Positions 13,701-48,458 of a stretch of 64,000 nucleotides of DNA are shown here, one piece after another. Within the stretch, counting starts at the first letter, position 1. Each line of letters starts with the position of its first letter. The stretch is taken from NCBI GenBank assembly GCA_000388065.2, contig KB932209.1; one strand, given 5' to 3'. The DNA comes from Fonticula alba ATCC 38817 (Eukaryota > Protista > Nucleariida). The position numbers and the translations under genes are program-made. The notes beneath the pieces were generated by a model. The model ran no database searches, was not told where the DNA came from, and saw only the letters and a list, made by a program, of their open reading frames with translations.

Positions 13701-16700
13701 TGTCCTCCTCGCCGACCGTCGGGGCGGTGGTCTTTTCCCTGGTGCTGGCCTGTCCCGAGGGGACTTGGCCCAATGCCGAGGACCATGTGTGTCAAGCCTG
13801 CGCGGCTGACTGTGCCACTTGCGTCTCCGCCGTCGGGTGTGCCACTTGTCGCACGGACTCCTATCTGGGCGCCGACCAGTCCTGCCACGCATGTCATATT
13901 TCCTGTGCTCGATGTGAAGATGCCGGCAGTTGTGTCGCATGTCGGCCGGGGCTGGTGTTCCTCGGGACCGATGTGCAGGTGCCGTCCCTGTGCGGGGGGG
14001 CCTGCCTGCCGGGCCAGTACATCGGTGCTGGCCGGTGCGCCGAGTGCGACGCCAGCTGCGAGCTGTGTGCCGGGAGCGCGGCCGCCTGCCAGGTGTGCGC
14101 CGATGGCTTCCGCTGGGCCAGCCGGCCGGCGCCCGGGGCCACCGGGACATGCGTGCCCTGCGCGTCGGGCTGTGCCTCCTGCACGGCAGACAAATGCCTG
14201 GCCTGCGAGGCGGGCCTCTTCCTGGCATCGGACGGGACATGTGTGAGCACGTGCCCGGCCGGGGCCTGGCCCAATGGGGAGTCCTGCCAGCCGTGCGACA
14301 TCTCGTGTGCCACCTGCACCGGCGGCGGCGGGGCCGACCAGTGCACCGGCTGTGGGGTGGGCTTGGACTTCGTCGAGAGCGCCCCCGGCGTCGGGGCATG
14401 TGTTTCCGGCTGCGACGAAGGCCAGTACCGGGACCCGGACGGGCTGACTTGCCTGCCGTGCGACGCGGCCTGTGCCNNNNNNNNNNCCCCCGGCGTCGGG
14501 GCATGTGTTTCCGGCTGCGACGAAGGCCAGTACCGGGACCCGGACGGGCTGACTTGCCTGCCGTGCGACGCGGCCTGTGCCGCTTGCAATGGTCCCTCGG
14601 ACCAGGATTGCTGGCAGTGCCGGAATGGGATACTTCAGGATGGCGACTGTGTGCAGTCCTGTGCCGGGTCGCATGTGGCCCTGGCCGGGAGGTGTGTATC
14701 TTGCCATGCGTCGTGTGCCGAGTGCTCCGGCGTGCGGAGCACCGAGTGCCTGCCGGCCTGCCCGGGCGACTTGCTCCCACTACCGGCTGGGCAGTCGCCG
14801 ATGCGCTGTGTGCCTGCCTGTCCGGTGGGCTACGGTGCCCTGTCCGGTGGATGCACCGCCTGTGCGGCCCACTGCGCCGCCTGCCCCGAAGCATCGAGCG
14901 CCTGTGCCCAGTGCGAGCGTGGGTGGCTCCTGGCCGGGTCGCAGTGCGTGGCTTCCTGTCCGGGGGACACCTTCCTCCTGGGTAGCATTTGTGCCCCGTG
15001 TCATGGAAGCTGTGGCACTTGCTCCGGGCCGGATGACAACCACTGTGTCACCTGCCCCGTGGGCACCTTCCTGCAGATGGACAACCGCTGCCAGGGGTCC
15101 TGCGCCGAGGGGACATTCCGAAGTGGCGACACATGCCTGCCCTGCAGCGAGGCATGTGCCTCGTGCTCCGACGCCGGGTCCGACAAGTGCACTGGCTGCG
15201 CGGCGGGCCGTGTGCTGCACCAGGGCACCTGCTTGCCGACCTGCCCGACGGGGTTCTTCAAGCAAGACGGCGCGTGCCACGCATGTGACGAGTCCTGCGC
15301 GGCCTGCATCAGCAGTGCCATTTGCACGGCCTGCAAGGGCCAGGATATGCTCCAGCCCGGGGGGACATGTGGCCCGGGCTGCCCGGGTGGGTGGGTTTCT
15401 TGCGCCTCCCGAGGCCAGTGCCTGGCTTGCAGGGAAAATTGCACCGAGTGCCTTTCATTCGGTGATGAGTGCCAAGTACTGTGCATGGCATGTGACCCGG
15501 GCTTTTTCCTCTCTTCCGGGGATTGCCACGAGGCCTGTCCGGCGGGGGAGTTTGCGGCCGCAGGGTCGGCCGTGTGCCAGTCCTGCGGCAACACCTGTGA
15601 GACCTGCTCCGGCTCGGGGGACTTCTGCACCGGCTGCCATTCGGGCCTTCTCCTGCCGCAAGAGGGTAAGTGTGTGCCTGCCTGTCCGGCTGCCTCGGCT
15701 CCGAGGGGCGGCGTGTGTGTCAGCTGCCTGGCCGGATGCGAGCAGTGCGACACGGCCCCAGGTCATCCTGGTGAGTGCACCCTCACCGGGGACGGGTCAC
15801 CGGTCTGCCCGGACATTGGCACTTGCGATCGCTGCATGGCGGGTCTCCTCCTGCTCAATGGGGGTGCCTGTGTGGAAGCCTGCCCGGCTGGGTACTTTGC
15901 CGACATGGACAGCCAGCTGGGCAGCTGTGTTCGCTGCCATGAAAGCTGCGCCGAGTCCTGCACCGGACCCGGGGTGGAAGGGTGCAAGTCTCCCGGGCGG
16001 TCGGGCAATTCGCGCATCGGCCTGGCCATCGGTCTGTCTGTGGGTCTGCTGCTGCTGCTGCTGCTGCTCATCCTTCTGGCGGCCTTGTGGCTGTTCTTTG
16101 CGCGCCGGCGAGGCACTCGGCCAATGAAGCCGGCCAACGGTGGCCTTCATGATGAGGATGCCACCATGATGAACACCCTGCTGGAGCTGGCCCTACCCGG
16201 GGCCATCCTGGTCAGTGTGGATGCGGACTTCGCGCCGGTGGCTGAGCAGCCCATGGGGGCCGGGGCCCAGGCCAGCGTCTTCGCCGCGCGGGCCATCGGT
16301 GCCGGGATTTCCGCTCGGCTAGGCTGCCCGGAGACGGTGGCCATCAAGCGCATGAAGGCCGACGCCATGAAGCCCACACATGTGGCCATGTTCCACAATG
16401 AGATCGCCCTCATGTGGTCCTTGCGCCAGCATGGGAACATCGTGCGCCTTTATGGATACAGCGAGGCGCCGCCGGCCATCGTCATGGAGCGCTTCGATAC
16501 GGACCTGCGCACGCTGCTCCTTTCGGCCGTGCCCCTGAGCCAGCTGGAGCTGCTGCACATTTGTCGCGAGTGGGCCACCGGGCTGGAGGCCATGCACGCG
16601 CACGGGGTGGCCCACTGCGACCTGAAGCCGGCCAATGTGTTCGTCAGCCAGGGCTCCTCGGCGGCTGGCTCTTGGCAGGTGGCTCTCGGGGATTTGGGCA

Positions 16701-17104
16701 CCTCTCGAAACCTGAGCACCGTCCGGTCTTCGGCCCTGCTGGACACCATGCCCCAGCTGAATGCCCTGTCTGTGAGGTACGCCTCGCCGGAGGTCATTGT
16801 GGCCATCAGGCGCAAGGCTCCCCTGGACCCGGAGCTTTTCTTCCCGGCCGACATCTACAGCGCGGCCATCATGCTGCATGAGTGCCTTTCACAGGCCACG
16901 CCTTGGCCGAGCTTGGGCCTCCAGGACATCATGCTGGCCGTGATTGGCGGGACTCGGCCCGAGGTGGCCGCCTTGACGGTGGATGCGGCGGATTTGGTGC
17001 AGGCGGCCTGGCAGGAGAACCCCTCTCGGCGACCCTCGGCGGCCGTCTTCCGCCAACGATGTGCGGCCCTGTTCGTGGTGGCCGGTGGCTTGGACACCTC
17101 TTGA
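10764..17104 (+). CDS. Receptor-like TKL-type kinase 1: signal peptide, modules A and B, furin-like Cys-rich repeats, TM, non-RD kinase; join(10764..12117,12258..17104), ~2030 aa after removing a 105-nt artefact
   Basis: Signal peptide LLLARLALAVLLGSLLGIAHG; many CxxCxxxCxxC repeats; TM IGLAIGLSVGLLLLLLLLILLAALWLFFA followed by RRR. Kinase motifs GAGAQASV, VAIK, NE, HCDLKPAN (16613), DLG (16691), YASPE, DIYSAA and RRPS. Phase-1 intron GTATGC(12118)..CAG(12257). Confidence 0.9.
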
Positions 17105-19306: not shown

Positions 19307-19881
19307 TTCATGTGCACGTTTGATGAGGATGTGTGGCCTTGGCCGTGGAGGGAGGGCGGCACCGGTTGCTTGTCCTGGCAGCCTAACTGCCAAGGTCCTG
19401 TGAGCCCCCTGCCCCCTGTGGTCGGACCGGTGTGCCAAGTCCCCGGTTGGTTCTTGTGCGCGATTGGGGTCCGTGAAGGTGGGTGCGTTTCGCCGAGCAA
19501 TCAACACGCCCTCTTGGATCCGCCCGCAGGCCCCCCGCGGTCTCATCACCTGGCGGGGCTTCTTTCCATCCCTACCCCGTGGCGGTGTGCCCCTCCTCCC
19601 GCCTCTATCTCGCGGTCTCTGCGGGGGAACGCGCAATCCCGGCGACAGAGGGCATATATGCTGAAAACCCGAAGCCACCAATGCCCCGTTGCCCTGGAGG
19701 CAGGAAGACCGCGATTTAGCGTGGACCGGAACAATAGCAACCACTTGGGCCCTGTGCTTGGCGCCTCTTCCAAAGGGTCTCCCATACTCCATTCCTTTTG
19801 CCCCCTCTTTCCTCTCTCTCTCCCTCTCTTCCCCCCCCCCCCCCCCCCAAGTGACATTGCTTCGGCCAAGCCGCCGAGTTG

Positions 19882-22800
19882 ATGGCTTCGCCGATGACCG
19901 GTGGCCGGGCCCTGCGCCGGCCTCCGATTGGGCCAGCCCCCTGCCCGAGACCCTTAATGCTCTTCCCGCTGGTGTTGCTCCTGCTCCTGGTGGCCACCAC
20001 ATCGCGAGGCGAGACGATCCTCCTGCGCGAGGCCCGGTACCCTTTCACGCAGGGGTTCCTGCCGGATTCCTTTTCCACTGGGCCCGGGTCTCCCTCCATG
20101 GGTCACCGTCGGGTGGGCACCACCAAAATCACCACCATGACGCAGGAGAACTTTCAAAGCAGCGTCAACGAGTTCCGCTGGGGGGCTTTCTTCCTGGATT
20201 CGACGCGGACCGCGATCCGCGAGGGGCCCGGCGACCCGAGTGCCGCGTCCCTCTTGATCCTCCCTCAGGGCAACAATTTGTTGCCCCTCATGGTGGAGAC
20301 CACCCCGAGCACAGTCAAGTTCTTCACCTCGGCCGTCGCGCATCCCTTCCCCAGCCCGATGACCGACATCCTGACCGGCACGGCCTTGCCCAATGGCGAT
20401 GTCCTTCTCCTGGGGCTGGTCGGGCCTTCGGATCAGGGGCGATCGATTTTCTTGGCCAAACTCACGGCAGCTGGTCTGGTGGACTTGGGTGCCAATATTG
20501 GCGATGTGATGGGCCCGGCCTTGGGCGCTCCTGGAGGCGGCTCCTCCCTCTACATGGCCCATGGGTCGCAAATTCGCTATATGCACCTGGACGGGGCGGA
20601 TAGCGTGTCGTCCTATCAGCAGGAATTCCCCGCCAATGTCCTGGGCATGGTCACCACACGAGTCGTCTCCACCGACAGCCTGTGTCCCTTCCGAGCCGAT
20701 GTGGTGCTCCTGCTGGACAATGGCAAGATCCTCCTGGAGCCCTGCTTTGGCGGTGTGCCGTACATGGAGCCGATCGTGGGAGACATGCCCATCGCGGCGG
20801 ATCCGTCGAACGTTCAGCTTCTGGCGGCGCCGGCCGCCGCCGTGGCCAATGGCGTCACGCCCTTCTACCTGGTGATTGCCAATGCATCGACTTCCTCGGA
20901 TAGGCTTTGGCAGTCCCATGTGCAACAGGGAGCCCTGACGTGGAATCGGGTGATGTTGCCGTTGTCCATTCTCAAGCTGGAAAAGTTGTCCTTGGCTCGG
21001 TTGTACAGCGGCCCCGACGCCGAGCCCGGGATATGGACTCTGGTGCATGGCTCGAGGGTGCTCTACATGTCGGAGGACTTCGGGTGCCACACCGACAGCA
21101 CCATCATCTGCCCGAGCAGCACGGGCTACAATAGCCACTCGAAAGGCTGGGCATGTGCCCCGGGCCATGTCGGCTCGCCATACATGGCCGACGGGCTTCT
21201 GTGTGGCGGGGGGGCGGATGGCTTTTTCCTGGACCGACCGGCCGGTATGTCCTCCCCCCTGGCCGGGGTTCTTGTCTTGGTCCTGCCTTGTGTGCTTCCT
21301 TGTTGATTGACCTGGCTTCCTCCTGCTCCCTCATGTCCTTTCACTGCCGACCCAGATGAGGCGCCCTTCTCTCGGCCGGGCCACCAATGCAAGCGCTGTC
21401 CCCAGGCGAATTGCCTATCCTGCAATGCGGAGGGGTGTCTCCTGTGTCATTTCAACTTCCACCCACAGATCCCCAGCGCCGCAGGTGGTGCCACCACCTG
21501 TGTGTCCAGCTGCTCGCCTGGGTTTAGCCTGGTGGCCGGGGTCTGTCGGCCCAGCAGCCCCCCCCTGCCGAACATCCATTGGGCCCTGCCGGCTCCCTTC
21601 GCCTTTCTTGGACTGGATCCCGGCGACCGGATCACGGCCCTGGGGGAGAGCTGGCTGTCGGTGGACACGCACACCGGGCAGCCGGTCATCCCGGCCGTCG
21701 ATGACGTCCGTGGCCCCGGGCCGCGGGTGCTGCTGTTCACGGAGCAGCGCAGGACCTATATCATGGCCGCGAGCGACGTCGGCCAGCCCGGGCAGCCGAC
21801 CTTTCGGCCGGTTTCCCTGCTGGACCCACATCCGGCCGCGCCGACGATTGGCTTTGCCGAGCTCGGCCCCTTTGTGTTCGGTGGATCGGTCGTGTACATG
21901 GTGGCTTTGTGTGGGGCATCTGGCGCGTCGCAGATCGTGTCGCTGAAGTGTTCGGGCCCGGTTGCCCCGTGCGTGCCCTCCAGTCGGGCATCTCAAAGTG
22001 TCCCAGGCGGGGGGTACTCCCAGGCGCGGCGTTTGAGCTCCACAAGCGCCATCATGCCCATCGGCCACGATGAGATGACTGTCATCCGGGTCGATCCGCC
22101 GGCCGAGGAGGCCCGGTTCTTGCTTCTGCCGGCCACCGGGGCCGTCAGCCTGCCGGCCAAAGTGGAGGCCGGTACTCGAGCCCGACCTGACTTCGGGGAC
22201 TGGCTCGTGTGGACCACCCAGCTGACAAAGGCCACGGCCGTGCCGTTGTCCCTCCTGAACAATGACCCGCGCATGAATGCGCTGGCTGGGCTCTTCATGT
22301 CGAGCTTGCCGAACACCGGCAACTCATATATGCCGGTGACCATTCCCCGCGGCCGGGGGTCCGGTTTGGTGGAGTTGGTCTTTGTCCAGGTGGCCGGTAC
22401 TGAGTGGCACATTATCCGGTCCCCGGGGGACATGTTGCCGTCTGGCCGGTCGGTGGATTTGGCATCTCAGCGCCATGCGCTCGGGTCCTTCCCGAGGGAC
22501 CTGCCTCCCAACAACCAGGGCATCTTGAATATCGTCCTTCAGGGCGTGGAGCTCACGTCCGGCAGCTCCACCTATCCCAGTGCCTTGCTGCTGATAACGC
22601 GCACCTTTGTCGGGGTGTCGTTGTTGCACTGTCCCGGCGGTGCTACCGGGTCGTGTGTCCTGCTGCCGGCCACCTTCGCGGTCCTTCCGCCGGAGTACAG
22701 CCCCCCGCAGGGGACACGAACTTGGCTGCAGGCCGTGGTGAAGCCGGGCGCCGGCCTGGCCAGCCAGGACTCGGGCGCCCTGCCCGCGGGTATTGTGCTG

Positions 22801-25382
22801 GACTTGCTGACTTTCAGCATGGAAACCGGGCCGGTGTCTTTGTCCTTGGCATTGCTGTGCCCGCCTGGCACGGCAGGCAGCGGGTGTGGTGCCTGCCACG
22901 AGACATGCACCGAGTGCGATCGTCCGGCCGACTCCGGAGCCTGCTCTGCCTGCCAACCGGGAATGGCCCTCTTCAACGGGATGTGTCTCAGCCAGTGCCC
23001 GGCCGGGACCTGGACGGATGTCAACACATGCCGAGCCTGCCCGGTCCTCTGTGACAGCTGCCAGTCCGGCGACTCGTGCACAGGCTGCGTGGCCCAGCAT
23101 TTCCTGGCCCCTGGCGGGCTTTGCACGGCATGCCATGGGTCATGCGCCGAGTGTGAGGACGCCTCCAGCTGCCTGTCCTGCCAGCCGGGGCTGGTATTCC
23201 TCGGGGCCGATGTGCAGGTGCCGTCCCTGTGCGGGGGGGCCTGCCTGCCGGGCCAGTANNNNNNNNNNNNNNNNNNNNNNNNNNNNNNNNNNNNNNNNNN
23301 NNNNNNNNNNNNNNNNNNNNNNNNNNNNNNNNNNNNNNNNNNNNNNNNNNNNNNNNNNNNNNNNNNNNNNNNNNNNNNNNNNNNNNNNNNNNNNNNNNNN
23401 NNNNNNNNNNNNNNNNNNNNNNNNNNNNNNNNNNNNNNNNNNNNNNNNNNNNNNNNNNNNNNNNNNNNNNNNNNNNNNNNNNNNNNNNNNNNNNNNNNNN
23501 NNNNNNNNNNNNNNNNNNNNNNNNNNNNNNNNNNNNNNNNNNNNNNNNNNNNNNNNNNNNNNNNNNNNNNNNNNNNNNNNNNNNNNNNNNNNNNNNNNNN
23601 NNNNNNNNNNNNNNNNNNNNNNNNNNNNNNNNNNNNNNNNNNNNNNNNNNNNNNNNNNNNNNNNNNNNNNNNNNNNNNNNNNNNNNNNNNNNNNNNNNNN
23701 NNNNNNNNNNNNNNNNNNNNNNNNNNNNNNNNNNNNNNNNNNNNNNNNNNNNNNNNNNNNNNNNNNNNNNNNNNNNNNNNNNNNNNNNNNNNNNNNNNNN
23801 NNNNNNNNNNNNNGAGCTGCTGGCCCTGCCGACCGGGGCGTCTCCCACGCGGTGTGTGCCGGCCTGCCCGGCGGGCTACCACACCACGGCGTCGGGGTGC
23901 TCGCCGTGTGGGTCCCATTGTGCCAGCTGCCCGGCCTCGGAGGCGTCCTGTGCTCAGTGCGAGCGCGGGTGGCTGCTGGCCAGCCCGGAGTGTGTGTCCT
24001 CCTGCCCGGGCGGCAGTCTGACGCTGGGGAATGTGTGCATCACCTGCCATGGCACCTGCGCCAGCTGCTTTGGCCATGGGCCGAGCCAATGCCTGAGCTG
24101 CAGACCCGGGGCCCCGTTGCTGGTCGATGGTGCCTGCCTCGACGCCTGCCCGGTCGGCACCTTCCAGCAGGGCCAGGCATGCCTGCCGTGCAGCGACGCA
24201 TGTGCCTCCTGCGTGGAGCCGGGGCCGAGCGAGTGCAGCACCTGCCCCGGGAACCGGGTCCTCCTGTCTGGGTCTTGCATTGCCGGCTGTGCGGATGGCT
24301 TCTTCGTCGAAGGGGGCATTTGTCTCGAGTGCCACGCGGCCTGTGCCATGTGCGCCGATGGCAGGACCTGTACAAGATGCAAGGGGTCGGCCTTGGTCGG
24401 TCCCACGGGGGCCTGCGTGTCGACCTGCCCGGTTGGCTGGCGTGCATGCCCGGACTCGGGCCAATGCCTGGCATGCCCGGCCCACTGCGTGGAATGCATG
24501 TCGGCCGATGGGGCCTGCACGGGCGTCTGTACGTCGTGCGAGGAGGGCTTTGTCCTGGCCTCCGGCCAATGCCGGGAGCAGTGTCCGATCGGGGAGTTCC
24601 TGCGGCCGGGGGCCGACACCTGCCAGCCCTGCGACGCTCCCTGCCACACGTGCATCGGAGTGGCCAACCGCTGCACGAGCTGCGCTTCGGGGCTCCTGCG
24701 CCCGGAGGAGGGAACCTGCGTGTCGGCTTGCCCGGCCGCCGAAGCCCCGGTGGAGGGCGCGTGCCTCAAGTGCTTTGCCGGGTGTGACCAGTGCGAGGCC
24801 GGTGTCGGCCAGCCCGGCTGTCGGTCGCTTGGCGGTCATTTGGCCGACTGCCCGGAGATCATCTCCTGCAAGGCATGCAGTCCGGGGCTGCTGCTGCTCG
24901 GGGGGAACACCTGCGTCGATGGCTGCCCGACTGGTCACTATGCCGATGTGGAAGGCTGGCCGCATGGGTGTGTGCCCTGTCACCCGAGCTGCGCCGGCTC
25001 CTGTGCCGGGGCCGGTGTTGATGGTTGCGTGTCGCCCTCCGGGCCGGGGTCCTCGCGCGTCGGCCTGGCTGTCGGCCTTGCATTGGGGCTGCTCCTGTTG
25101 TTGATCCTCCTCATCTTGGTGGTGCTGTGTCTCATCCGCCGGCGCCGCCAGAGGGGCGGTGCCCTGGGCAAGGCCCCTCACGATGAGGATGCCACCATGC
25201 TGAACACCATCGTGGAGCTGGCCCTGCCCGGGGCCATCCTGGTCGGTGTCGACACGGACTTCCGGCCGCTGGATGAGCAGCTGGGCACCGGGACCCAGGC
25301 ATCGGTCTATGCGGCGCAGGCGGTGGGCACGGGGATCATGGCGCGCCTGGGCTGTCCGGATGTCGTGGCCGTGAAGAGGATG
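19882..25382 (+). CDS. Receptor-like kinase 2 (paralog); join(19882..21244,21356..>25382); internal gap 23259..23813; most of the kinase domain lies in gap 25383..26253
   Basis: Signal peptide LMLFPLVLLLLLVATTSRG; EFRWGAFF module; phase-1 intron GTATGT(21245)..CAG(21355); furin-like repeats; TM VGLAVGLALGLLLLLILLILVVLCLI then RRRRQR; DEDATMLNTIVELALPG; GTGTQASV...VAVKRM, then Ns. Confidence 0.85.
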
Positions 25383-26867
25383 NNNNNNNNNNNNNNNNNN
25401 NNNNNNNNNNNNNNNNNNNNNNNNNNNNNNNNNNNNNNNNNNNNNNNNNNNNNNNNNNNNNNNNNNNNNNNNNNNNNNNNNNNNNNNNNNNNNNNNNNNN
25501 NNNNNNNNNNNNNNNNNNNNNNNNNNNNNNNNNNNNNNNNNNNNNNNNNNNNNNNNNNNNNNNNNNNNNNNNNNNNNNNNNNNNNNNNNNNNNNNNNNNN
25601 NNNNNNNNNNNNNNNNNNNNNNNNNNNNNNNNNNNNNNNNNNNNNNNNNNNNNNNNNNNNNNNNNNNNNNNNNNNNNNNNNNNNNNNNNNNNNNNNNNNN
25701 NNNNNNNNNNNNNNNNNNNNNNNNNNNNNNNNNNNNNNNNNNNNNNNNNNNNNNNNNNNNNNNNNNNNNNNNNNNNNNNNNNNNNNNNNNNNNNNNNNNN
25801 NNNNNNNNNNNNNNNNNNNNNNNNNNNNNNNNNNNNNNNNNNNNNNNNNNNNNNNNNNNNNNNNNNNNNNNNNNNNNNNNNNNNNNNNNNNNNNNNNNNN
25901 NNNNNNNNNNNNNNNNNNNNNNNNNNNNNNNNNNNNNNNNNNNNNNNNNNNNNNNNNNNNNNNNNNNNNNNNNNNNNNNNNNNNNNNNNNNNNNNNNNNN
26001 NNNNNNNNNNNNNNNNNNNNNNNNNNNNNNNNNNNNNNNNNNNNNNNNNNNNNNNNNNNNNNNNNNNNNNNNNNNNNNNNNNNNNNNNNNNNNNNNNNNN
26101 NNNNNNNNNNNNNNNNNNNNNNNNNNNNNNNNNNNNNNNNNNNNNNNNNNNNNNNNNNNNNNNNNNNNNNNNNNNNNNNNNNNNNNNNNNNNNNNNNNNN
26201 NNNNNNNNNNNNNNNNNNNNNNNNNNNNNNNNNNNNNNNNNNNNNNNNNNNNNGAAAAAACATTCAGGGGGTCCAATGCCGACCTGCCCCACCTCCTTCA
26301 CCCGCCCTCCCCTGTTCCACCTGGCCGGTCGGCACTCATAGAAAGTGGGCGAGCGGTGCCGACGCACACCCTGGACAATACCTCCACGCTGGGTTCTTGT
26401 GGAACCTCCCCCCCCCTCCTCCCCTAAGCCCACGCCCGGGCCTGTTGTCCACTCTGGGCTATGTGCCCACGTGCGGTATGTCCGTGTGTTTGTGTGCACC
26501 TGGAGATGCGACCTGAATAATGGGCATCGTACGAGCGAGCGGGGCTCGCCCAGGAATTCGCTGACATCCCCCGGCCTCGGTTTACGTGCCCCCGCCCCCT
26601 GGTGGCCTGACCCAATTGCGGACCTCGAGTTACCCTCCCCGACGGCCCCAAAGGTAGGGCCGAGACTCGGACCGACAAATAGAGTAAACAGAAGGGGCGC
26701 CAGTGTGAATGCATCTGGCGTGTGCTTGGCTACTCCTCTCAGCCTTAGTGCTGATCCCCCTGCCCCCTCCTCCTCGCCTCCCTCGCTTCCCTCGCTTCCC
26801 TCGCCTCCTTTTGCTCCAGGATTTGTGCCACCCGTCCGACTGCGCATGGAATAGGCGCGGGGCTAGA

Positions 26868-29800
26868 ATGGCCATCTCGCGCGCCTCCCGGTGCCCATGG
26901 CCCGGTCCCCTTCTTCGGCACTGTCCGCTGCGGATGCTGCCGCTGCTGGTGGGGGTCCTGCTGTCGGTGTTGCTTTCTGCGCGTGGGGAGGGGACCTTCC
27001 TCCAAAGGGCCAAGCATCCCGTTTTGTCGACTGAATGGCCTGCATTCTCTTCGACCCATCCCCAGGCAGCCTCTATGATGTGGATTCTCCAGGACGATAT
27101 GGTCTTCCTGGGCTATCAGCAGGCCGACATGCTGAGCGACATCCCGGAAGTCCGGTGGGGGACCTTTTTCAGGTTGCCCAGTCAAAAGTTTTCCGTCGGT
27201 GCCCCGGGCCAGATACAAAGCCCGAGTTACATGCTTCTGCCGGTGGAGGGGGATCCGCTTCCGGAGTTAGTCTGGCACAATTCATCCATCGTGTCGTTGT
27301 TTACCTCGTCTCACCAGTTTTCCCTGCCGGCTCCGGGCATCGAGCTTCTTGCTGGATTTGCTCTTGAAGCCGGCAGAGTGGTTCTTCTGGGCCAGACAAA
27401 GGCCATTGACACGTTCCGTCGGCTCTACACAGTCATTTTGGGACCGACCGGCCATACTGCCGACGAATTCCTGCCCGAAATGATGTGGACCGACCACCTT
27501 GTCACCGTCGGCTGGATGTGGTCCTTCTACGTGGCCCACCAAAGGGATATACTGCATCTGTTCTATGATGGTGGGCTGCGACTTGAAGTGCATCGTCTCG
27601 AGCTGCCTGCCGATGCTCTGGACCTGGTGGCCACGCGACTTGTTTCTCCGGCGGAAAGCTGTCCAGGCTGGTCGGATCTGGTTGTCCTGACGGCCGAGGG
27701 CACCCTCGAGGTCTTCCTCTGCCTCGGTCCGGAATCCCCCCGGAGCATCGTGTCAGAACGGCTGCCAAGCGGCACACATTTGGCCGGGGCCCGGTTGCTG
27801 GCCCCACGGGCAGATGCTCTGGCCCTTGATCCAGGGCCCCTGTACCTGATCGCGCCGCACTCGCTGCAGCAGGCTGACCGTCTGTGGAAGCTCCTCATCA
27901 AAGACCAAATACTCAGTTGGCAGCGGCTCATTTTGCCGGATGCCGGCTTGCGCGATATGGGGTCGGGGTTTCCGGAGTTGCTGCGGTTGCGTGTGGTGGC
28001 TGATCATCCCCCTATTTGGACCTTGGTCCTGAATCGGCATGTGCTATTTGAGGCCGAGCATTTCGCTTGCGCCAGCGACGATACCATCGATTGTGGCTCT
28101 TCCGCGTCAGGCTCCTCGGCTGACGGCTGGTCATGCGTCGGTAGCCGTGCTGGGTCCCCCTTTGTCGCCAGTGAGCAGCTGTGTCCCGGGTGTGCGAATG
28201 GGTACTTCCTGGATCGTCAGAGTGGTGCGCCTGCCTGTGCTGGCTGTCTCTTGCCATCATCTCCCGGCCCTTGCTCCTGCTTGGCTCGCTTGGTCATCAT
28301 GATGACTCGGCCATTGTCCCGTTGACTGACAATATCAATGGCTCCGGCCCTCTTGCCTGGCCTGGTGCCCTTTGCCCTTGACATTTTGCCCCCCCCCCCC
28401 CCCCCCCCTCCCGCCCCCCTCAGGTGGTGGGACCTCCCCTTCTGGGAGCCAAGCGTGCATCCCGTGCCACCAGGCCAACTGTGACACCTGTTTCAAGAGC
28501 AACTGCCTGGTGTGCGCCCCTGGCTTCCTGCTGGAAGCCCGACCCGACGATGGCACGACGGTCTGTGTGGCCACCTGCTCGGCGGGCCTCGTCGGGATGG
28601 AGGGAAGCTGTCGGCCGGTGGATTCCCTGCAGCTCGCTGGCAGGGTGGGTGCATGGGAGATGGATCTGGCTCCCGGGGAAGTGATCACTGCCCTCGCGAG
28701 CACCCGGCTCCTGGTCGACGACTCGTCAGGTCAGTTGATTTTGCCGGCAGCCGGATCGGCTTCCGGCCTGCTGGCTTTTAGCACGTCGGCCAAGGCCCTC
28801 TTTTGGATGGCCAATCAGCCGGGTTTCTCGATCGCCGCTCCGGCCCGGCGTGTGCTGTCTTTTACGCCGCCACTCATGCATGAGATTGTCCACTTGGCCG
28901 AGGTGGGCCCCTTCTCGATGGGCAGCCAGCGATCGCACCTGCTGGTCATGTGCGACAAGAACCAGGAAGTCTTCCTCGGTTGGCTGGTCTGCTCCATGGC
29001 CGAGAGCTGCACGCCGGGGCCGGTTGCCTCGCTGCTGTCGCCGGGGCTGGCGGATTGCGTGGGGGTTCGGCAAATCAGCGTCGATGTCATTCTGATCGAC
29101 CGGGCCGATGGGCAGCTGACATTCCTCCAGGCGCAACCGGCCACCCGGACCCATGTCCTGTGGGCCACATCCGGAGCGGGTGCTGTGGTCCTGTCTGCTC
29201 GGGGCACCAGCCGCGCGGATCGGGCCCCGGAAGACTGGCTGGTGTGGGGCAGCCTGCATGGGAAGGTCACTGCCAGCCCGATTGCCCTTGCCTTGGAGGG
29301 CAGTGCGTCCGACTCGCGGCTGGCGGTGCGGGATGAGGGTTTCCTGGCCGGCAGCTCATCGAATGATGCCGGGCTCATGCCGGTGTTGCTCCCACGACCG
29401 GGCAGCATCCCGGAATTGGTCTTCTCCCAGGTGTTTGGCGTGGATTGGATAGTCCGGCACACGCCGGGAGACCTGTTGCCGGCTGGGCGATCCACACAAC
29501 TGCCCTTTTTCCAGGAACATCTCGGGACCCTGCCAGAGGAAATCAGCCCAGCGGCCGCCATCGGGCCGAGCATTCTCCTCCAGGGCCTGGCCCTCGAGGG
29601 AGGGGATCCCCACTTTCCGAGCATCCTACTCATGCTGACCCGTACTTTCATCGGGGCATCTGTGCTGCATTGCCCTGGCGGCGTATTCGGCCCGTGTGCT
29701 CTGCAGCCGGCATCCTTCATTGTGCTGCCTGTCTCGCGGCAGATCCCGGAAAGTAGTCCCTTTTGGTCGCCGGCCATTGAGCAACTGCCCGCCGCTCGGT

Positions 29801-32800
29801 CGGCTGGGGGTTCCATGCATTCGGCCAGCACGTCCCAGTTGCCGGAGGTGTTGCTCTTTGCGCCGGACACCGGGGCCATGGTCCTGTCGCTGAGTGCAAG
29901 CTGTCCGGCCGGGCAATTTGGCATCCCTTGCCAGAATTGAGATCAGAGTTGCGCCACTTGCAGCGGGCCCGGGCCCGAAGCGTGTACTTTTTGTCATGAG
30001 GACAAGTGGCTTTTAAATGGCAGGTGCCTTGACGATTGTACCGATGGCACGTGGCCTTACCACGGAAATGGCGTGTGCCTGTCCTGCCAGTCGTTCTGTA
30101 CTACATGCACCACGGCGTCCACCTGCACAGGCTGCGTGGCCCGGCATTTCCTGGCCCCTGGCGGGCATTGCACGGCATGCCATGGGTCATGCGCCGAGTG
30201 TGAGGACGCTTCCAGCTGCCTGTCCTGCCAGCCGGGGCTGGTATTCCTCGGGGCCGATGTGCAGGTGCCGTCCCTGTGCGGGGGGGCCTGCCTGCCGGGC
30301 CAGTANNNNNNNNNNNNNNNNNNNNNNNNNNNNNNNNNNNNNNNNNNNNNNNNNNNNNNNNNNNNNNNNNNNNNNNNNNNNNNNNNNNNNNNNNNNNNNN
30401 NNNNNNNNNNNNNNNNNNNNNNNNNNNNNNNNNNNNNNNNNNNNNNNNNNNNNNNNNNNNNNNNNNNNNNNNNNNNNNNNNNNNNNNNNNNNNNNNNNNN
30501 NNNNNNNNNNNNNNNNNNNNNNNNNNNNNNNNNNNNNNNNNNNNNNNNNNNNNNNNNNNNNNNNNNNNNNNNNNNNNNNNNNNNNNNNNNNNNNNNNNNN
30601 NNNNNNNNNNNNNNNNNNNNNNNNNNNNNNNNNNNNNNNNNNNNNNNNNNNNNNNNNNNNNNNNNNNNNNNNNNNNNNNNNNNNNNNNNNNNNNNNNNNN
30701 NNNNNNNNNNNNNNNNNNNNNNNNNNNNNNNNNNNNNNNNNNNNNNNNNNNNNNNNNNNNNNNNNNNNNNNNNNNNNNNNNNNNNNNNNNNNNNNNNNNN
30801 NNNNNNNNNNNNNNNNNNNNNNNNNNNNNNNNNNNNNNNNNNNNNNNNNNNNNNNNNNNNNNNNNNNNNNNNNNNNNNNNNNNNNNNNNNNNNNNNNNNN
30901 NNNNNNNNNNNNNNNNNNNNNNNNNNNNNNNNNNNNNNNNNNNNNNNNNNNNNNNNNNNNNNNNNNNNNNNNNNNNNNNNNNNNNNNNNNNNNNNNNNNN
31001 NNNNNNNNNNNNNNNNNNNNNNNNNCCACCTGCCACGGGACGTGTGCCACATGCTACGGCCCGGGGGACAACAACTGCCTCTCCTGCGGCTCGAGCGCCC
31101 CGGTTCTGGTTGATGGCCGCTGTGTGACGGCGTGCCCCCTGGACACCTACCAGAGTGGGGGCACCTGCTATGCCTGCAGCCCGACATGTGCCTCCTGCTC
31201 GGGGCCCGGCCTCTCCGCGTGCACCGCGTGCTCGGGCGACCGGGCCCTGCTTGGGGGCGAGTGCCTGCTGGATTGCCCGGATGGGTACTTCGCCGAGGCC
31301 GACCATTGCGCCCTGTGCCATGGATCCTGCGCCACGTGCAGCAGCCGGGACGTCTGCACCTCGTGCAAGGGCCAGGATATGCTCCAACCGGATGGGCTGT
31401 GTGCCGCTGGCTGCCCGGAAGGGTGGGGTGCCTGCCCGGCCACGAACAAGTGCACGGCTTGTCCGGCGCAATGTGCGCAGTGCGAGCCCTCCGGTCCGTC
31501 GTGCGACATGGTCTGCACCAAGTGCAAGGCCACCTTCTTCCTGTCCTCCGGCGCCTGCCATGGGTCCTGCCCGGCCGGGGAGTTTGCGGCCCCGGGGTCG
31601 GGCATTTGTCAGGCCTGTGACAGCGCCTGCCGGAGCTGCTTCGGGTCGGCAAGCTTCTGCACCGGCTGCGATGGGGGGCTCCTCCATCTGGACGAGGGGG
31701 TCTGTGTGTCGGCCTGCCCGAGTGCCTCGGCGCCGGTGGGCGGGGTATGCCTCCACTGCCTTGACAAGTGCGAGCAGTGCGAGCCGGCCGCCGACCAGCC
31801 CCAGTGTGCGATCCGGGCCGATGGGGCGCTCGAATGCCCGGAAATTGCCACCTGCAGTGCATGCGTCTCCGGGCACCTCCTGCTCGGGGGGGCCGCCTGT
31901 GTGGAGGTGTGCCCGGCCGGCTACTTCGCCGATCTTGACGGCCAGCCGGCCGTCTGTGCTCCCTGCCACGCGAGCTGCACCGACTCCTGTCTGGGGCCGG
32001 GGGAAGATGAGTGCACGTATCCCCGCAGGAACAGCAAGTTTGTCCTGGGCCTGGCCGTGGGTCTGTCGGTGGGGCTGCTGCTGCTGCTGATCTTGCTGAT
32101 CCTGGTGGTGCTGTTCCTCATCCGCCGGCGCCGCCAGAGGGGCGGTGCCCTCGGCAAGACCCCTCATGATGAGGATGCCACCATGCTGAACACCATCGTG
32201 GAGCTGGCCCTGCCCGGGGCCATCTTGGTGAATGTGGATCTTGATTTCCGGCCGATGGACAAGACCCTCGGTGCAGGGACCCAAGCGAGTGTGTATGTTG
32301 CGCAGACAGTCGGCTCCGACATGGTGGCCCGGCTGGGCTGCCCGGATATTGTGGCCATCAAGAAGATGAAGTCTCAAGACACGAAGCCCCTGCATGTGGC
32401 CATGTTCCAGAATGAGGTGGCCCTGATGTGGCTGCTCCGGGAGCATGGGAACATCGTGCGCCTCTTCGGGTACAGCCAGTCGCCGCCGGCCATTGTGATG
32501 GAGCGCTATGACACGGACCTGGCCACGCTGCTGCATTCGGCGGTGGAGCTGTCGGCCGTTCAGCTGCTGGACATCTGCCAGCAGTGGGCCTCCGGGCTGG
32601 AGGCCATGCATGCCAATGGGGTGGCCCATTGCGACCTGAAGCCGGGCAATGTCTTTGCCAGCCAGCGCCCGGACGGGGGCTGGCGCGTGGCCCTCGGGGA
32701 TTTGGGGACCAGCAAAAATCTGAGTGCCGACCGGTCGTCGGCCCTCATCCTGACCATGCCCAAGCTGAATGCCCTGAGCGCCCGGTACGCGGCGCCGGAG

Positions 32801-33115
32801 CTGCTGGCGGCCGTCCGTCGAGGCACTGCGCTCGAGCAGCACCTCCTCTTCCCGGCAGACATCTATGCTGCGGCCATTTTGCTGAATGAGTGTCTGTCGC
32901 GGACCATCCCCTGGGATGGGCTGAGCCTGCAGCAGATCTCGGATGCGGTGCAGGTGGGCGATCGTCCGCCAGTTGGCGGAGATCCTCCAGCTGGCTTGAT
33001 GGACTTGGTGCATGCTGCCTGGCAGCCCGATCCCGAGCGTCGTCCTGCGGCGGCGATCTTCCGCCAGCAATGCTCGGCTTTCTTTGTGGCGGCCGATGGT
33101 CTGTCCCAAGGCTGA
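26868..33115 (+). CDS. Receptor-like kinase 3 (paralog); join(26868..28224,28424..33115) with an in-frame TGA at 29938..29940 and gap 30306..31025; possible pseudogene or recoded gene
   Basis: Signal peptide MLPLLVGVLLSVLLSARG; EVRWGTFF; phase-1 intron GTGCGC(28225)..CAG(28423). The frame continues past the TGA as DQSCATCSGPGPEAC. TM plus a complete kinase with GAGTQASV, VAIK, HCDLKPGN (32627), DLG and YAAPE. Confidence 0.82.
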
Positions 33116-36100
33116 TGCCAGCGTGTGCGGCGCTGCCAGGCGGCGGAGCAGGCCGGTGCGGGGGTGGACCGCATGCAGCACCGGCCCCCCCTCCGGGGAG
33201 GGGCAGGTCACCTATCACCAGCTGCCCTGTGGATGTATCGGTGTCGATGTCCTGCCACGGCCCAGGGGAGCCATGCTGCCATGGAGGTCACGACAGCGGA
33301 AATGCCACGCCCCAGGCTTGTGTCCCAAGCCGGAGTGACCCCATGCTGCCGGGTGGCCAGGCTGCCGCGGAGAATAGACTCCTTTCGCAAGCAAAGCCCC
33401 GAAACTGGTGGTGGCGGTGACAGTCCACCTCGGCGGCAAAGTGGCTTCTGCTCCAGAGCCTTCGCTATGCATGCGCCGGGATCAGAGGAGGCCAGGTGGA
33501 TGGGGGAGGGGGGACGGGGCGGGGCGGAAAGAGGGCATCCTGTCAGACACCCGCCAATCGGGCTGGATGTTCGCCACCAACGGGGAGGGCCCTGGTGCTT
33601 CTTCTTCCGGCGGCTGGGGGGGGGGACGAGGGGGGCCTATTTTCGGCATGAATATACTTATGCCATTAGAAATAGCCTTCAAAAAGGGGATTTTGTCAGG
33701 TCCTGCGTTGTCAATTTTACCCGAGTAGGGCTAATGCGGGGTCGAACATTTTTGGGAACATGTTCCAGGTGCGAAAGACGAGCGCGGGGCGGGGTGTGCC
33801 CGCCGCATGGCTACGAGATGTAATGTCCCGGGCCGAGGGGGGCAAATCGAGCATCCTCGCCCCTGTGTCCTGGTGCGTGCGGATTTTTGGTATGCTGCTT
33901 TTCGCCGGGTCCGGTTGGCCCCGGCGTGCTCTGCCCTCTTCCCCCCCCCCCCCCCCCCCCCCCCGTCGCTCGCTCACTCAGTTCCTGGGAGTTTGAGCTC
34001 CGGTCCCGGGGCCCCAAGAGACCCCAGGGGGAGGATGCACACATGTCGGAGGCTTTGCCTCACCTTCTCGCCCGATCCCTCGCCTGTCCCCCTGTCTCGG
34101 GCTGTTTCGCGCCTTCCGGCCTTTTTTTCCACCGCCGGTGGCGAGCACCGCGGTGCCGAGGATCGGTGTGCGGTGCCACCATGTCAGGTCGGGCAGCGCC
34201 GGCCGGCGCACTACCGGCCCCTACCTCGGGGTTGTGTCGGAGCCGGCCCTTTGGCTGGTGTGCAGCTCCGGGCCCGGGATCCCGTCCTGCGCATTGCTCC
34301 AAGGGCTCCGCCTTCGATTGCCATGCTGTCTGCCTTCTCCAGCGGCCAGGGACGTGTATCTGTGCCGGCGAAAGGCCGGGGCGGGGCCCTGGTACAGGGG
34401 GGGCCTCAGGCCGCGACCCGGGATCACCCGGCTGGCATGTCCCTGGTGGCTCATCCCTGCGGAGCATGGCGCACGCGCGGCAATTCATGCGCCTACATCG
34501 GCAATCCCGGTGCCGGGGGGCCTCATGTCCTTGGTACTTCCCCATCGCTGGGGGGACATCGCCCACAGGCACCGCGAGCACTGGGGGAGCTCTTGACCGG
34601 CGGCTCGAGGCGGACTCCGCCCCCGGCGGGGGATCGAGGCCTTGGCTGGATATCGCTGCGTCGGCCGACGCCAAGCCCATTTTCGGGCCTCATCGGCGGG
34701 GGGGCACCACGCGCGTGGCCCGGGTACGTGGCCACCTTCACACCGACGGGTCTCGGGGCATGGTGTGCCGGGCTGGCTCCTGGCGGACCGGGTTCCGGGA
34801 CTGGCTGTGCATGAGGATGTGACATGCTTGTGTTTGGGCGCTCCGGCGGGCAGTCGCGTCGCCAATGTGGTCCAGGCAGGAGGGCGTGTGCTCCTGTCCC
34901 TGATCACCATGGTGGTTCTGCTCGGACCCCGGGAATGCCCAATGGCGGGCAGCAGTGCGAGCCGTCGGGGGGGGGGGGGGGAGGGACAGGCAAGCCGTGC
35001 TGCCGGTGTGCGATTCAGTTCCGACATCATAGCGGCCGTCGTCGACATGGTGACGCCGCTGCCGGGCATAATGCAGCCGACCAAGATCCGCCCCCTGCCT
35101 GTGCCTGGCGTTGTCCGGGACAGCCACAGGCCGCCCTTGTGGCTGGCCTCGCCCCGGTCGGTGGATCCCTGCAGCCGTTGGTGGAGACTCCGCATCCGAG
35201 CAAGCGGACTGGGGTGCTGGCCAGTCCCCCCGCCAGGGACCCTCACTCGCCTGGCAGGCCTGCCTCGGGCCGGGCGCCGCACGAAGGCGCCGCTTCTTTC
35301 TGGGGTCTGGCAATTCGCTTGGACACGCGGCAGGCGGTTCTTCCACTGCTTGGCGTGTCCCCCCCCCCCCGGCCGCGAAGCCGACCATGGTCGTGTGAGC
35401 GATAGCCTCCTGTCGGCCGACGAGCGCCCCCTCCGGGGGCCGCGTGCCCCGGGCCGAGCCACGTCCTCGGATACGCCCACTGGCGGCCCTTGACCTGGAC
35501 GGCACGACTGGGGCCGACCTCAATGGCTGGAAGGGTGCCCAAGCTCCTTCCCCTCCCTCGCGGTGGCCACTCGCTTTGGGCACCTTCCGGCGGGGCCCTC
35601 CCCCCGTGGGCCTGCACCGGACTCCCCTTGCATATCTGTGGCGCCCGGCACTGTCTGGCCGGCCGGCCGGCCGGCCTGCTGCCGGTGTTGCCGCGCTCGG
35701 TCGATTCATCCATCCGGGCTTTCCGCCGTGCGCGGCTTTGGCCACCGAGTGGTCCCTCCTCGCCCGGCCGGCCAGCCGCCGATTTGGGGGCTTCGCTCAG
35801 GGCCTCTTTCGCCGGGCATTGCGGCCCCCATGGCACATGGCCGCCATGTGCTGTGCCGATGCACGGGCCCGGGGCCGACTTCACAGCGATACACGGTGTT
35901 GTATGTGCAACCAGGGCTCCCGGCCGATTCGGTGGGGCCGCGGGTGGCGGGCCATCCGCGCGGTGGCCAGCCGGTCGGCTTGCCGTTGCCCGGGCAGACC
36001 CACGGTATTTGCCCATCCCCGGGATGTCACCCGGCCTTGCGACTTGTTGTCATGGGCGAGAGCCGGCTGGCGCCGACACCGACGCCTCAGCACCTGGCCG

Positions 36101-46968: not shown

Positions 46969-47174
46969 CATGCGCGCTCCGGTTTTGGTGTGCGAAAGCA
47001 ACCACCCCGTGCTTGAGCCTCTCTCTCTCTCTCTCTCATATACACCTTGTGCTAAAGTTTCCCCGTGTCGCCACTTTTTTACTGTGTGTGTGTCTGCGCT
47101 CCCAGGCGCGCTGGCTTGGAAGGCGGGCCGGGGGCCGGCAAAAAGGAGCGGGACGCGGGACGAAAAATAGTGAT

Positions 47175-47247
47175 AGCCCACTGTGGGGCTCGAACCCACG
47201 ACCCTGGGATTAAGAGTCCCATGCTCTACCAACTGAGCTAAACAGGC
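47175..47247 (-). tRNA. tRNA-Lys-CTT: tRNA-Lys, anticodon CTT, intronless; Pol III T5 terminator at 47167..47163
   Basis: Reverse complement GCCTGTTTAGCTCAGTTGGTAGAGCATGGGACTCTTAATCCCAGGGTCGTGGGTTCGAGCCCCACAGTGGGCT folds as a 73-nt cloverleaf with perfect D, anticodon and T stems. Confidence 0.95.
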
Positions 47248-48384
47248 TTTCGATCCATGCCATTTGCAGGTGCAATTTATACTTTCGCAGAATTTGTATT
47301 CCCCCCCCGAGGCATGGCTGTTCCATTGCAAGCCCCACGGGCCATGCTCCGGGCGGTGGACGAGAACGAAGAAAGTGTCCCGTCGCCGCTGGGTGGCCTC
47401 TCGAACCAGGATCGCCTCCTGGCCGCCACGCCGGCCCAGGGCCATTCCTCGCTGGGGATGTGCCCTGCCCGGTCGCCCGGTGGCAAGAGCCCGCGCACCG
47501 AGGACGGTCCTCTGTCGGTTTCGATGGTACCGAAGGGGATGGACCATGCCCCCCTTCGCTCTCGGTCCATGTGTCCTCGCCCCCGCCGGCCTGGCACGCT
47601 TCCGCGTGGCCTGAGGTCTCTCATGCGACCTCTCGGCCACCTACCGATCGGGGGAACGGGAATGCACATATATACATCTGTCGCACTGGGCTCCCCCCCC
47701 CCCCCCCCCCCCCCCTCCACTCCCTGGCTCAACCTTTGCAGCTCTTTCTGGCTTCGAGAGGGCATGGCTCCCCCCACGAGGGCTGCATGTATTTTGGGCG
47801 CCAGATCCGAAAGGGATGGCATGCCATCCTCGGGGACCCGGCCCAGGGAGCGGCTTTGGGTGTCCCCGGAGGCGCTGCATCTCGAGAGGGTGACTAGGCG
47901 CGGCAAAGGCAGCCACACAAGGACCAGGGAGGCTGGCGAGGGGTGTCGGGGCGGGCGAGTACATCGGGACCTACGTCGGGCCGCTCCGGAGGGGGGGCGA
48001 ATGACAGCGAGAGGGCCGCCGGAAGGTGCCGTCCCCCAAAGGGAGGCGGACTTCCCCTCACAGGGTTGCGATGCTGGGAGACGGCCGACACAGGAGGCCC
48101 TTTAATGATGGTGTCCAGGGCAGTGGTGAAAGGCGGGTGGGCAGGGAGGGCCCGAGGTAAAGGGCCAAGGCAACGAGACGGGGATGGGCGCCGACATGCG
48201 GGCCTGTTCCGGCCGGCGGATCGTCTGGGAAAAGGGCCATCCCCGAATCGGGATATCGCGCCGAGAGGCCTTCTGACCCCGGCGACAGTGAGGGAGGCGG
48301 GCGGCGCGAAGCCCTGGCAGATGGTGGGGGTGAGGATGAAGGTAAAGGGTGGTTTGAATACCAAAACTCGTGTGCAAACCCCAT

Positions 48385-48458
48385 GGCCGCGTAGCTCAAT
48401 TGGATAGAGCACCTGACTACGGATCAGGAGGTTGTGTGTTCGAGCCGCATCGTGGTCA
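48385..48458 (+). tRNA. tRNA-Arg-ACG: tRNA-Arg, anticodon ACG, intronless; Pol III T6 terminator at 48461..48466
   Basis: GGCCGCGTAGCTCAATTGGATAGAGCACCTGACTACGGATCAGGAGGTTGTGTGTTCGAGCCGCATCGTGGTCA forms a cloverleaf with anticodon stem CCTGA/TCAGG and a TTCGA T-loop. Confidence 0.95.

What the first reader, a model, noticed from the sequence alone, without database searches (positions are those of the whole stretch)
29938..29940. In-frame TGA exactly at a conserved Cys of receptor 3, at the head/stalk boundary
Seen: ...CPAGQFGIPCQN-TGA-DQSCATCSGPGPEACTFC aligns to gene 4 CPEGTYGLYCDP-C-DDACLTCRGPGPGDCKTC. The frame stays open through the stalk, and the TM and complete kinase show no other visible lesion (one N-gap aside). 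No phase-compatible strong intron removes it. A true stop would give a clean ~957-aa secreted protein of signal peptide plus modules A and B. Options (inference): a single-base assembly error (TGC/TGT to TGA), a recent null or soluble-decoy allele, readthrough giving both soluble and membrane forms, or Sec insertion. I could not recognise a SECIS by eye, and the TGA-G context is not the known leaky TGA-CTA.
Basis: partly seen in the sequence, partly recalled or inferred. Interest (0 to 1): 0.8.

Follow-up and report, generated by a model that had tools for sequence, protein, structure and literature searches.

The report
False stop codon from assembly error
The stop codon that seems to cut a Fonticula alba receptor kinase gene in two is in the draft reference sequence, but not in the RNA contig of the same organism label nor in independent DNA, which both read TGC (cysteine); the gene is most likely intact and the finding ordinary.

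Summary
TGA at 29938-29940 lies in frame in the third of four tandem receptor-kinase paralogues. It aligns to a Cys in paralogues 2 and 4 and in 28 of the 29 family members whose local alignment reaches that column.

The stop is not supported by sequencing data. In one search, an RNA-run contig with the assembly's organism label (X6) covers 29521-29998. Its only difference from the window is 29940 A>C. An independent 2025 DNA data set (X5) covers 29439-30153 and also reads C. Both give TGC, Cys.

X6 is collinear across the codon, so no intron removes it. X6 contigs also cover the stalk, transmembrane segment, kinase and about 280 nt of 3' UTR. The listed strain differences downstream of the codon are 6 synonymous to 3 conservative replacements. 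No SECIS-like RNA was found.

The organism is Fonticula alba. The public model H696_05292 ends exactly at this TGA and is a chimera of gene 2 and the gene 3 ectodomain.

Verdict: a single-base error in a gap-ridden draft assembly, or less likely a non-fixed allele. It is not recoding and not a pseudogene. The scan has noted similar in-frame TGAs elsewhere in this genome; they deserve the same read check.

The parts
29938..29940 (+). TGA in the reference; TGC (Cys) in the reads. The third base, 29940, is the disputed one.
   Evidence: sequence. table 3: 29940 A>C in X6 (depth 7.02 of 7.02, 59 nt from the contig end) and in X5 (6.7 of 6.7, 214 nt from the end); the column is Cys in paralogues and in 28 of 29 family members.
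26868..28224 (+). Gene 3 exon 1: start codon, signal peptide and ectodomain module A
   Evidence: ATG at 26868; hydrophobic MLPLLVGVLLSVLLSA segment; public model P0001 uses 27066-28229; the X6 contig leaves the genome at 28223, while the DNA contigs of X5 and X13 run on to 28289 and 28300.
28225..28423 (+). Intron (GT..AG, phase 1) with a long poly-C tract at 28388-28419 before the acceptor
   Evidence: sequence; the joined exons give a stop-free 957-aa frame. table 8, record 17 against records 1 and 9.
28424..29937 (+). Exon 2, first part: ectodomain module B (no Pfam match) up to the first furin-like repeat
   Evidence: 0 Pfam families. (homologous to the three paralogues and to 30 further proteins). 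records 18-20 (contigs from an RNA run).
29941..30305 (+). Cys-rich stalk after the disputed codon, open to the assembly gap
   Evidence: weak GF_recep_IV and Furin-like_2 matches. records 20-21 (X6 contigs 29521-29998 and 29979-30283).
30306..31025 (.). Assembly gap (720 N) inside gene 3. It hides roughly 240-310 aa of stalk and explains the frame change from 0 to 1.
   Evidence: paralogues have 291-309 aa between the flanking parts. table 7: two X5 contigs run about 211 nt into the gap.
31026..32038 (+). Furin-like repeat stalk after the gap
   Evidence: PF15913, 39.3 bits against cut-off 28, 3 stretches. records 22-23.
32039..32122 (+). Transmembrane segment
   Evidence: 28 hydrophobic residues followed by RRRRQR.
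32255..33055 (+). Complete protein kinase domain with a non-RD catalytic loop HCDLKPGN at 32627
   Evidence: PF00069, 101.8 bits, profile positions 5-255 of 263..
33113..33115 (+). The real stop codon of gene 3 (TGA)
   Evidence: X6 contig 32668-33390 runs through it into the 3' UTR (record 24).

Best explanation
The A at 29940 is a single-base consensus error of the draft Fonticula alba assembly. The true codon is TGC, the family-invariant second Cys of the C-x-x-C pair that opens the furin-like stalk. Gene 3 is then an intact, transcribed, spliced receptor of about 2,000-2,100 aa: signal peptide, modules A and B, Cys-rich stalk, one transmembrane segment and a non-RD Ser/Thr-type kinase. The false stop, together with two assembly gaps, misled the public annotation. 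That model ends at this TGA and fuses gene 2 to the gene 3 ectodomain. Shown: the base in two data sets, collinear coverage of the site by a contig from an RNA run, coverage on both sides of it, and conservation of the Cys. Inferred: that the A is an error rather than a rare allele.
For: table 3: 29940 A>C in X6 (RNA-type run, same organism label as the best DNA holders X1-X4; depth 7.02 of 7.02; 59 nt from the contig end) and in X5 (2025 DNA, another label; 6.7 of 6.7; 214 nt from the end). table 8: the eight listed X6 contigs cover 3,243 nt and differ from the window at only this one base, so X6 is the reference strain. X5 and X13 differ at about 0.4%, so they are another strain. Three points indicate that X6 is spliced RNA. 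Its contig leaves the genome at 28223, at the predicted donor, whereas the DNA contigs run on to 28289 and 28300. Its listed contigs end at 33390, and its depth is zero from 33516 onward. X5 DNA is present again at 33592-33842. X6 record 20 crosses the codon without a gap, so no intron removes it. X6 contigs cover 31240-32075 and 32668-33390, downstream of the site. Cys at this column in paralogues 2 and 4 and in 28 of 29 family members; of the listed differences to X5 and X13 downstream of the codon, 6 are synonymous and 3 conservative; the window has 12 N gaps, and the codon lies 366 nt from a contig end in about 64% GC sequence; the public model ends at the TGA and is chimeric, which shows that assembly defects shape this locus.
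Against: I could not lay the assembly's own DNA reads (X1-X4). How many source reads carry A is therefore unknown. X6 and X5 are Logan contigs, which drop rare variants, so an A allele at low or even moderate frequency would not show. X6 is labelled 'RNA?' (guessed), though its splicing and 3' end behaviour fit RNA. If a TGA allele were degraded by nonsense-mediated decay, RNA would be enriched for TGC. X13 has no contig over the site, and the raw-read RNA run X25 gave no reads on the gene.
Confidence: 0.72

Rival explanations
1. The A is real but not fixed. It is one allele, heterozygous or a subpopulation of the sequenced culture, of a gene whose main allele is TGC. The TGA allele would encode a 957-aa secreted ectodomain or simply be a null.
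For: The reference assembler did call A. Contigs hide minor variants (tool note). NMD could deplete the TGA transcript from the RNA run.
Against: Only C is seen in the same-label RNA-run contig and in an independent strain. No second contig with A appears in either run. X6 shows no other difference from the reference over 3,243 nt, so there is no sign of a second haplotype at this locus (table 8).
Confidence: 0.2
2. A fixed recent nonsense mutation: gene 3 is a young pseudogene or a soluble-decoy gene in the sequenced strain.
For: The reference sequence and the public protein model end there.
Against: The contig from the RNA run with the same organism label, identical to the reference at every other laid base, reads TGC. 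The downstream part is covered by that run's contigs and shows 6 synonymous to 3 replacement differences between strains. The kinase domain is complete.
Confidence: 0.04
3. UGA is recoded, either by selenocysteine insertion or by programmed readthrough, giving both short and full-length products.
For: The stop sits on a Cys column, as in Sec/Cys pairs. The frame stays open behind it.
Against: The only transcript contig over the site reads UGC, so no UGA is seen to recode. No SECIS family, nor any other plausible RNA family, matched in 29800-34600 even at E up to 10. The Cys is a structural C-x-x-C residue of a furin-like repeat, not a redox centre (inference from the Pfam families). TGA is the ordinary stop of genes 1 and 3.
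Confidence: 0.01
4. RNA editing (A to C) restores the Cys codon in the transcript.
For: DNA reference A against RNA-run contig C for the same organism label.
Against: Independent DNA (X5) also has C. To my knowledge A-to-C is not a known editing type. No other RNA-DNA difference appears in 3,243 nt.
Confidence: 0.01

Closest known systems
Single-base consensus errors in draft genome assemblies that create false premature stops and truncated or chimeric gene models
   Same: There is one substitution relative to the reads. It lies near a contig end in a GC-rich, gap-ridden scaffold. The annotated protein stops at it. The transcript-run contig and another strain carry the sense codon.
   Different: Nothing of note. 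The only open point is that the source reads were not inspected, so a rare real allele is not excluded.
Furin-like / growth-factor-receptor Cys-rich repeat receptors with a cytoplasmic kinase (EGFR and insulin-receptor type ectodomain repeats; CXXC-rich transmembrane kinases of Entamoeba; Giardia VSP-like repeats)
   Same: The layout is a stalk of C-x-x-C-rich furin-like repeats (PF15913, PF14843, weak PF03302), one transmembrane segment and a cytoplasmic kinase.
   Different: The kinase has a Ser/Thr-type, non-RD loop (HCDLKPGN), not a tyrosine-kinase loop. The N-terminal modules A and B have no Pfam match. Only 31 relatives were found in 1.84 billion proteins, and the five whose names I saw are all from Fonticula alba.
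Eukaryotic selenoprotein genes (UGA = Sec, with Cys homologues)
   Same: An in-frame TGA in the reference lies at a position that is Cys in homologues.
   Different: UGA is absent from the transcript contig, no SECIS was found, and the position is a structural disulfide-type residue.

Membership tests
Assembly or sequencing base error | Independent reads of the same organism disagree with the reference base | tested here: met
   29940 is C in X6 (same organism label, otherwise identical to the reference) and in X5 (independent DNA).
Assembly or sequencing base error | The reads the assembly was built from do not support the reference base, or support it only weakly | not tested
Selenoprotein gene | UGA present in the mature mRNA | tested here: not met
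   X6 contig 29521-29998 reads UGC.
Selenoprotein gene | SECIS element in the 3' UTR | tested here: not met
   the Rfam scan of 29800-34600 at E up to 10 gave only two chance-level lncRNA matches and no SECIS family.
Selenoprotein gene | Sec machinery (tRNA-Sec, EFSec, SPS, PSTK, SecS) in the genome | not testable with these tools
   Only this window is held. It contains no tRNA-Sec. Two literature searches gave nothing relevant.
Programmed stop-codon readthrough | A stop codon in the mRNA, followed by a conserved open frame | tested here: not met
   The open frame is there, but the transcript contig shows no stop.
Young pseudogene or null allele | The lesion is present in the organism's DNA and RNA | tested here: not met
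   the two data sets that cover the site both read TGC. A minor allele is not excluded.
Young pseudogene or null allele | Relaxed constraint or loss of expression downstream | tested here: inconclusive
   6 synonymous to 3 replacement differences downstream. The numbers are small and only the best-supported differences were listed; contigs from the RNA run cover the stalk, kinase and 3' UTR.
Fonticula furin-repeat receptor Ser/Thr kinases (tandem array in this window) | Modules A and B, furin-like stalk, TM and kinase domain, collinear with the paralogues | tested here: met
   collinear with gene 1 (P0032) and gene 4 (P0002), at 33-34% identity in the ectodomain and 56-57% in stalk plus kinase. 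PF15913 at 39.3 bits and PF00069 at 101.8 bits, both above their cut-offs.

The most novel reading that the evidence does not exclude
The TGA is a genuine allele carried by part of the ATCC 38817 culture, or by one homologue. Fonticula would then make, beside the full receptor, a 957-aa secreted ectodomain (modules A and B) acting as a soluble decoy.
Probability: 0.12. Interest if true: 0.25.

Novelty: not a real feature. Interest (0 to 1): 0.06.

Why it matters
It matters only as housekeeping. The public protein H696_05292 is a wrong model: a chimera of two genes that ends at a false stop. The stalk, transmembrane segment and kinase of receptor 3 belong to none of the protein models I retrieved. 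Kinome or receptor counts for Fonticula alba, a key outgroup for fungal and animal origins, inherit such errors. The result also sets a prior for the other in-frame TGA notes in this genome: check the reads before proposing recoding.

Tried and rejected
1. Metagenome evidence for the base. An exact pattern with N at 29940 found nothing in the JGI metagenome contigs. A protein-guided scan with the 121-aa piece found no relative.

2. Partial proteins from read-level assemblies that would span the codon. Searches with the 121-aa piece and with the 200 aa before the TGA returned nothing. The length rule also keeps full-length relatives out of such searches.

3. A search with the public model's last 508 residues found only paralogues at 35% identity or less. 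No second assembly's orthologue is in that collection.

4. Intron hypothesis. Many in-phase GT..AG pairs span the TGA by chance. All of them would delete conserved residues, and the X6 contig is collinear across the site.

5. The joints table 5 within 31054-32783 have no GT..AG ends. They lie in the kinase and stalk repeats, so I read them as cross-laid paralogue contigs at the 90% likeness setting, not as splicing.

6. The raw-read RNA run X25 gave only poly-C noise at 28388-28419. Its organism label is evidently not a Fonticula culture.

7. My first guess of the organism (Acanthamoeba) was wrong. Source names identify Fonticula alba.

8. Literature searches on Fonticula selenoproteins and receptor kinases gave nothing useful.

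Full report
**What is in the window**

The codon at 29938-29940 is TGA, in frame 0. The frame is open from 28330 to 29937 and again from 29941 to an assembly gap of 720 N at 30306-31025. Behind the gap the same gene continues in frame 1 to a TGA at 33113-33115. The frame change across an N gap of estimated length carries no information.

tblastn of the three pieces against the window shows four collinear paralogues on the + strand:
- gene 1, about 10926-17101
- gene 2, about 21382-25382, cut by a gap
- gene 3, 26868-33115
- gene 4, about 41517-46965

Gene 3 reads ...GIPCQN*DQSCATC..., against ...GLYCDPCDDACLTC... in gene 4 and ...GSGCGACHETCTEC... in gene 2. Gene 1 lacks this first repeat.

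**How conserved the column is**

An exhaustive phmmer search with the 536 aa before the TGA found 31 relatives in 1.84 billion representative proteins. I aligned a 106-residue stretch, with X at the stop, to these proteins. Of the 29 whose local alignment reaches the column, 28 have Cys and one has a gap. The top hit, P0001, ends exactly at the residue before the TGA.

**Gene model**

- ATG at 26868, followed by a signal-peptide-like hydrophobic stretch.
- Exon 1 runs to 28224.
- A GT..AG phase-1 intron spans 28225-28423, with a long poly-C tract before the acceptor.
- Exon 2 starts at 28424.

After the gap come furin-like repeats (PF15913, 39.3 bits), a transmembrane segment at 32039-32122, and a complete kinase domain at 32255-33055 (PF00069, 101.8 bits). 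The kinase has VAIK, HCDLKPGN, DLG and APE motifs. By comparison with genes 1 and 4, the gap hides about 240-310 aa. The full protein would be about 2,000-2,100 aa.

**The decisive test**

The stretch is held by several runs:
- four small 2012 DNA runs of organism A (X1-X4, probably the assembly's source)
- four 2012 RNA-type runs of organism A (X6, X8, X10, X11), which hold both the part before and the part after the codon
- 2025 DNA runs under another label (X5, X7, X12, X13)
- soil and sediment metagenomes

I laid X6, X5, X13 and the raw RNA run X25 on 28000-33900. At 29940 the window has A. X6 reads C (depth 7.02 of 7.02, one contig covering 29521-29998, site 59 nt from its end). X5 reads C (6.7 of 6.7, contig 29439-30153, site 214 nt from its end). 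X13 has no contig there, and X25 has no reads on the gene.

The eight listed X6 contigs cover 3,243 nt and differ from the window at this single base, so X6 is the reference strain. X5 and X13 differ at about 0.4%, so they are a different strain of the same species.

X6 behaves as spliced RNA:
- Its contig leaves the genome at 28223, at the predicted donor, while the DNA contigs of X5 and X13 continue to 28289 and 28300.
- Its listed contigs end at 33390 and its depth is zero from 33516 onward, whereas X5 DNA is present again at 33592-33842.

The X6 contig crosses the codon without a gap. No intron removes the codon, and the transcript reads UGC.

**Constraint downstream**

One search lists 12 other well-supported differences between the window and X5 or X13 in the coding sequence, outside the stretch where kinase paralogues cross-lay. 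Eight are synonymous and four are conservative replacements. Downstream of the codon the split is 6 to 3. The numbers are small and the table lists only the best-supported differences. Still, this is the pattern of a gene under purifying selection, not of a dead 3' half.

**Recoding**

With UGC in the transcript contig there is nothing to recode. For completeness:
- An Rfam scan of 29800-34600 at E up to 10 found no SECIS family, only two chance-level lncRNA matches.
- The window has no tRNA-Sec.
- TGA is the ordinary stop of genes 1 and 3.

RNA editing is excluded as the general explanation because independent DNA also has C.

**Identity and annotation**

Source names identify the organism as Fonticula alba. 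P0001 is 'hypothetical protein H696_05292', 2452 aa. Mapping it back to the window gives:
- residues 1050-1562 on 23814-25352 (gene 2 stalk, TM and start of kinase)
- residues 1562-1949 on 27066-28229 (gene 3)
- residues 1947-2452 on 28420-29937 (gene 3)

The public model is therefore a chimera that jumps the N gap at 25383-26253 and ends at the false stop. Gene 1 is P0032 ('serine/threonine protein kinase', 1994 aa) and gene 4 is P0002.

**Interpretation**

The most likely account (about 0.72) is a consensus base error in a draft, GC-rich assembly with 12 N gaps in this window. The site is 366 nt from a contig end.

The main rival (about 0.2) is a real but non-fixed A allele in the sequenced culture.

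A fixed nonsense mutation, Sec insertion or readthrough, and editing together get a few per cent.

**Relation to other notes of the scan**

Earlier notes report other in-frame TGAs in this genome: s1-065815 at the DFG-1 position of a receptor kinase, and s1-065374 at a zinc-finger Cys, which was followed up without reads. Other notes report genes broken by assembly defects (s1-065408, s1-065401). I did not test those. The present result suggests they should be checked against reads before any recoding is proposed.

**Verdict**

The biology behind it is most likely absent. The finding is an assembly artefact of low interest, apart from correcting the gene model.

Noticed in passing
window 19855-29940 (N gap 25383-26253): The public protein H696_05292 (P0001, 2452 aa) is a chimera. 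It joins the gene 2 stalk, TM and start of kinase (23814-25352) to the gene 3 ectodomain (27066-28229, 28420-29937) across an assembly gap, and it ends at the false TGA.
   Followed up: partly
window 30305-30306: Two X5 DNA contigs run about 211 nt into the 720-N gap. The first 30 letters continue the Cys-rich frame (...IGDGRCAEC). The gap could therefore be closed from public data (table 7).
   Followed up: no
window 28388-28419: A poly-C tract of about 30 nt lies just before the acceptor of the 28225-28423 intron. It attracts hundreds of unrelated reads and contigs, with depth up to about 2,200 in a 197-nt bin, and produces spurious 'goes back' joints in the read tables.
   Followed up: partly
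window 13700-13800: Gene 1 lacks the first stalk repeat that holds the disputed Cys in genes 2-4. Module B runs straight into the next repeat.
   Followed up: no
window 13622-13717 (+), 47174-47248 (-), 48384-48460 (+): ARAGORN calls tRNA-Lys(CTT) and tRNA-Arg(ACG) between gene 4 and the next genes. It also calls a 96-nt 'tRNA-Trp' inside the coding sequence of gene 1, which is probably a false call.
   Followed up: no
window 50702-51694 (-): A further furin-like Cys-rich stretch on the minus strand matches the gene 3 stalk at about 28% identity. It may be a fifth, oppositely oriented family member.
   Followed up: no
runs X5, X7, X12, X13, X9, X14: DNA about 99.6% identical to this Fonticula alba locus turns up in 2025 runs filed under another organism's label, and in soil and sediment metagenomes. 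Close relatives of the only cultured strain therefore exist in public data and could serve for population comparisons.
   Followed up: partly
other pieces of this genome (notes s1-065815, s1-065374): Other in-frame TGAs have been flagged as candidate recoding, one of them also at a Cys position (s1-065374). They may be the same kind of reference error as here, and none has been checked against reads.
   Followed up: no
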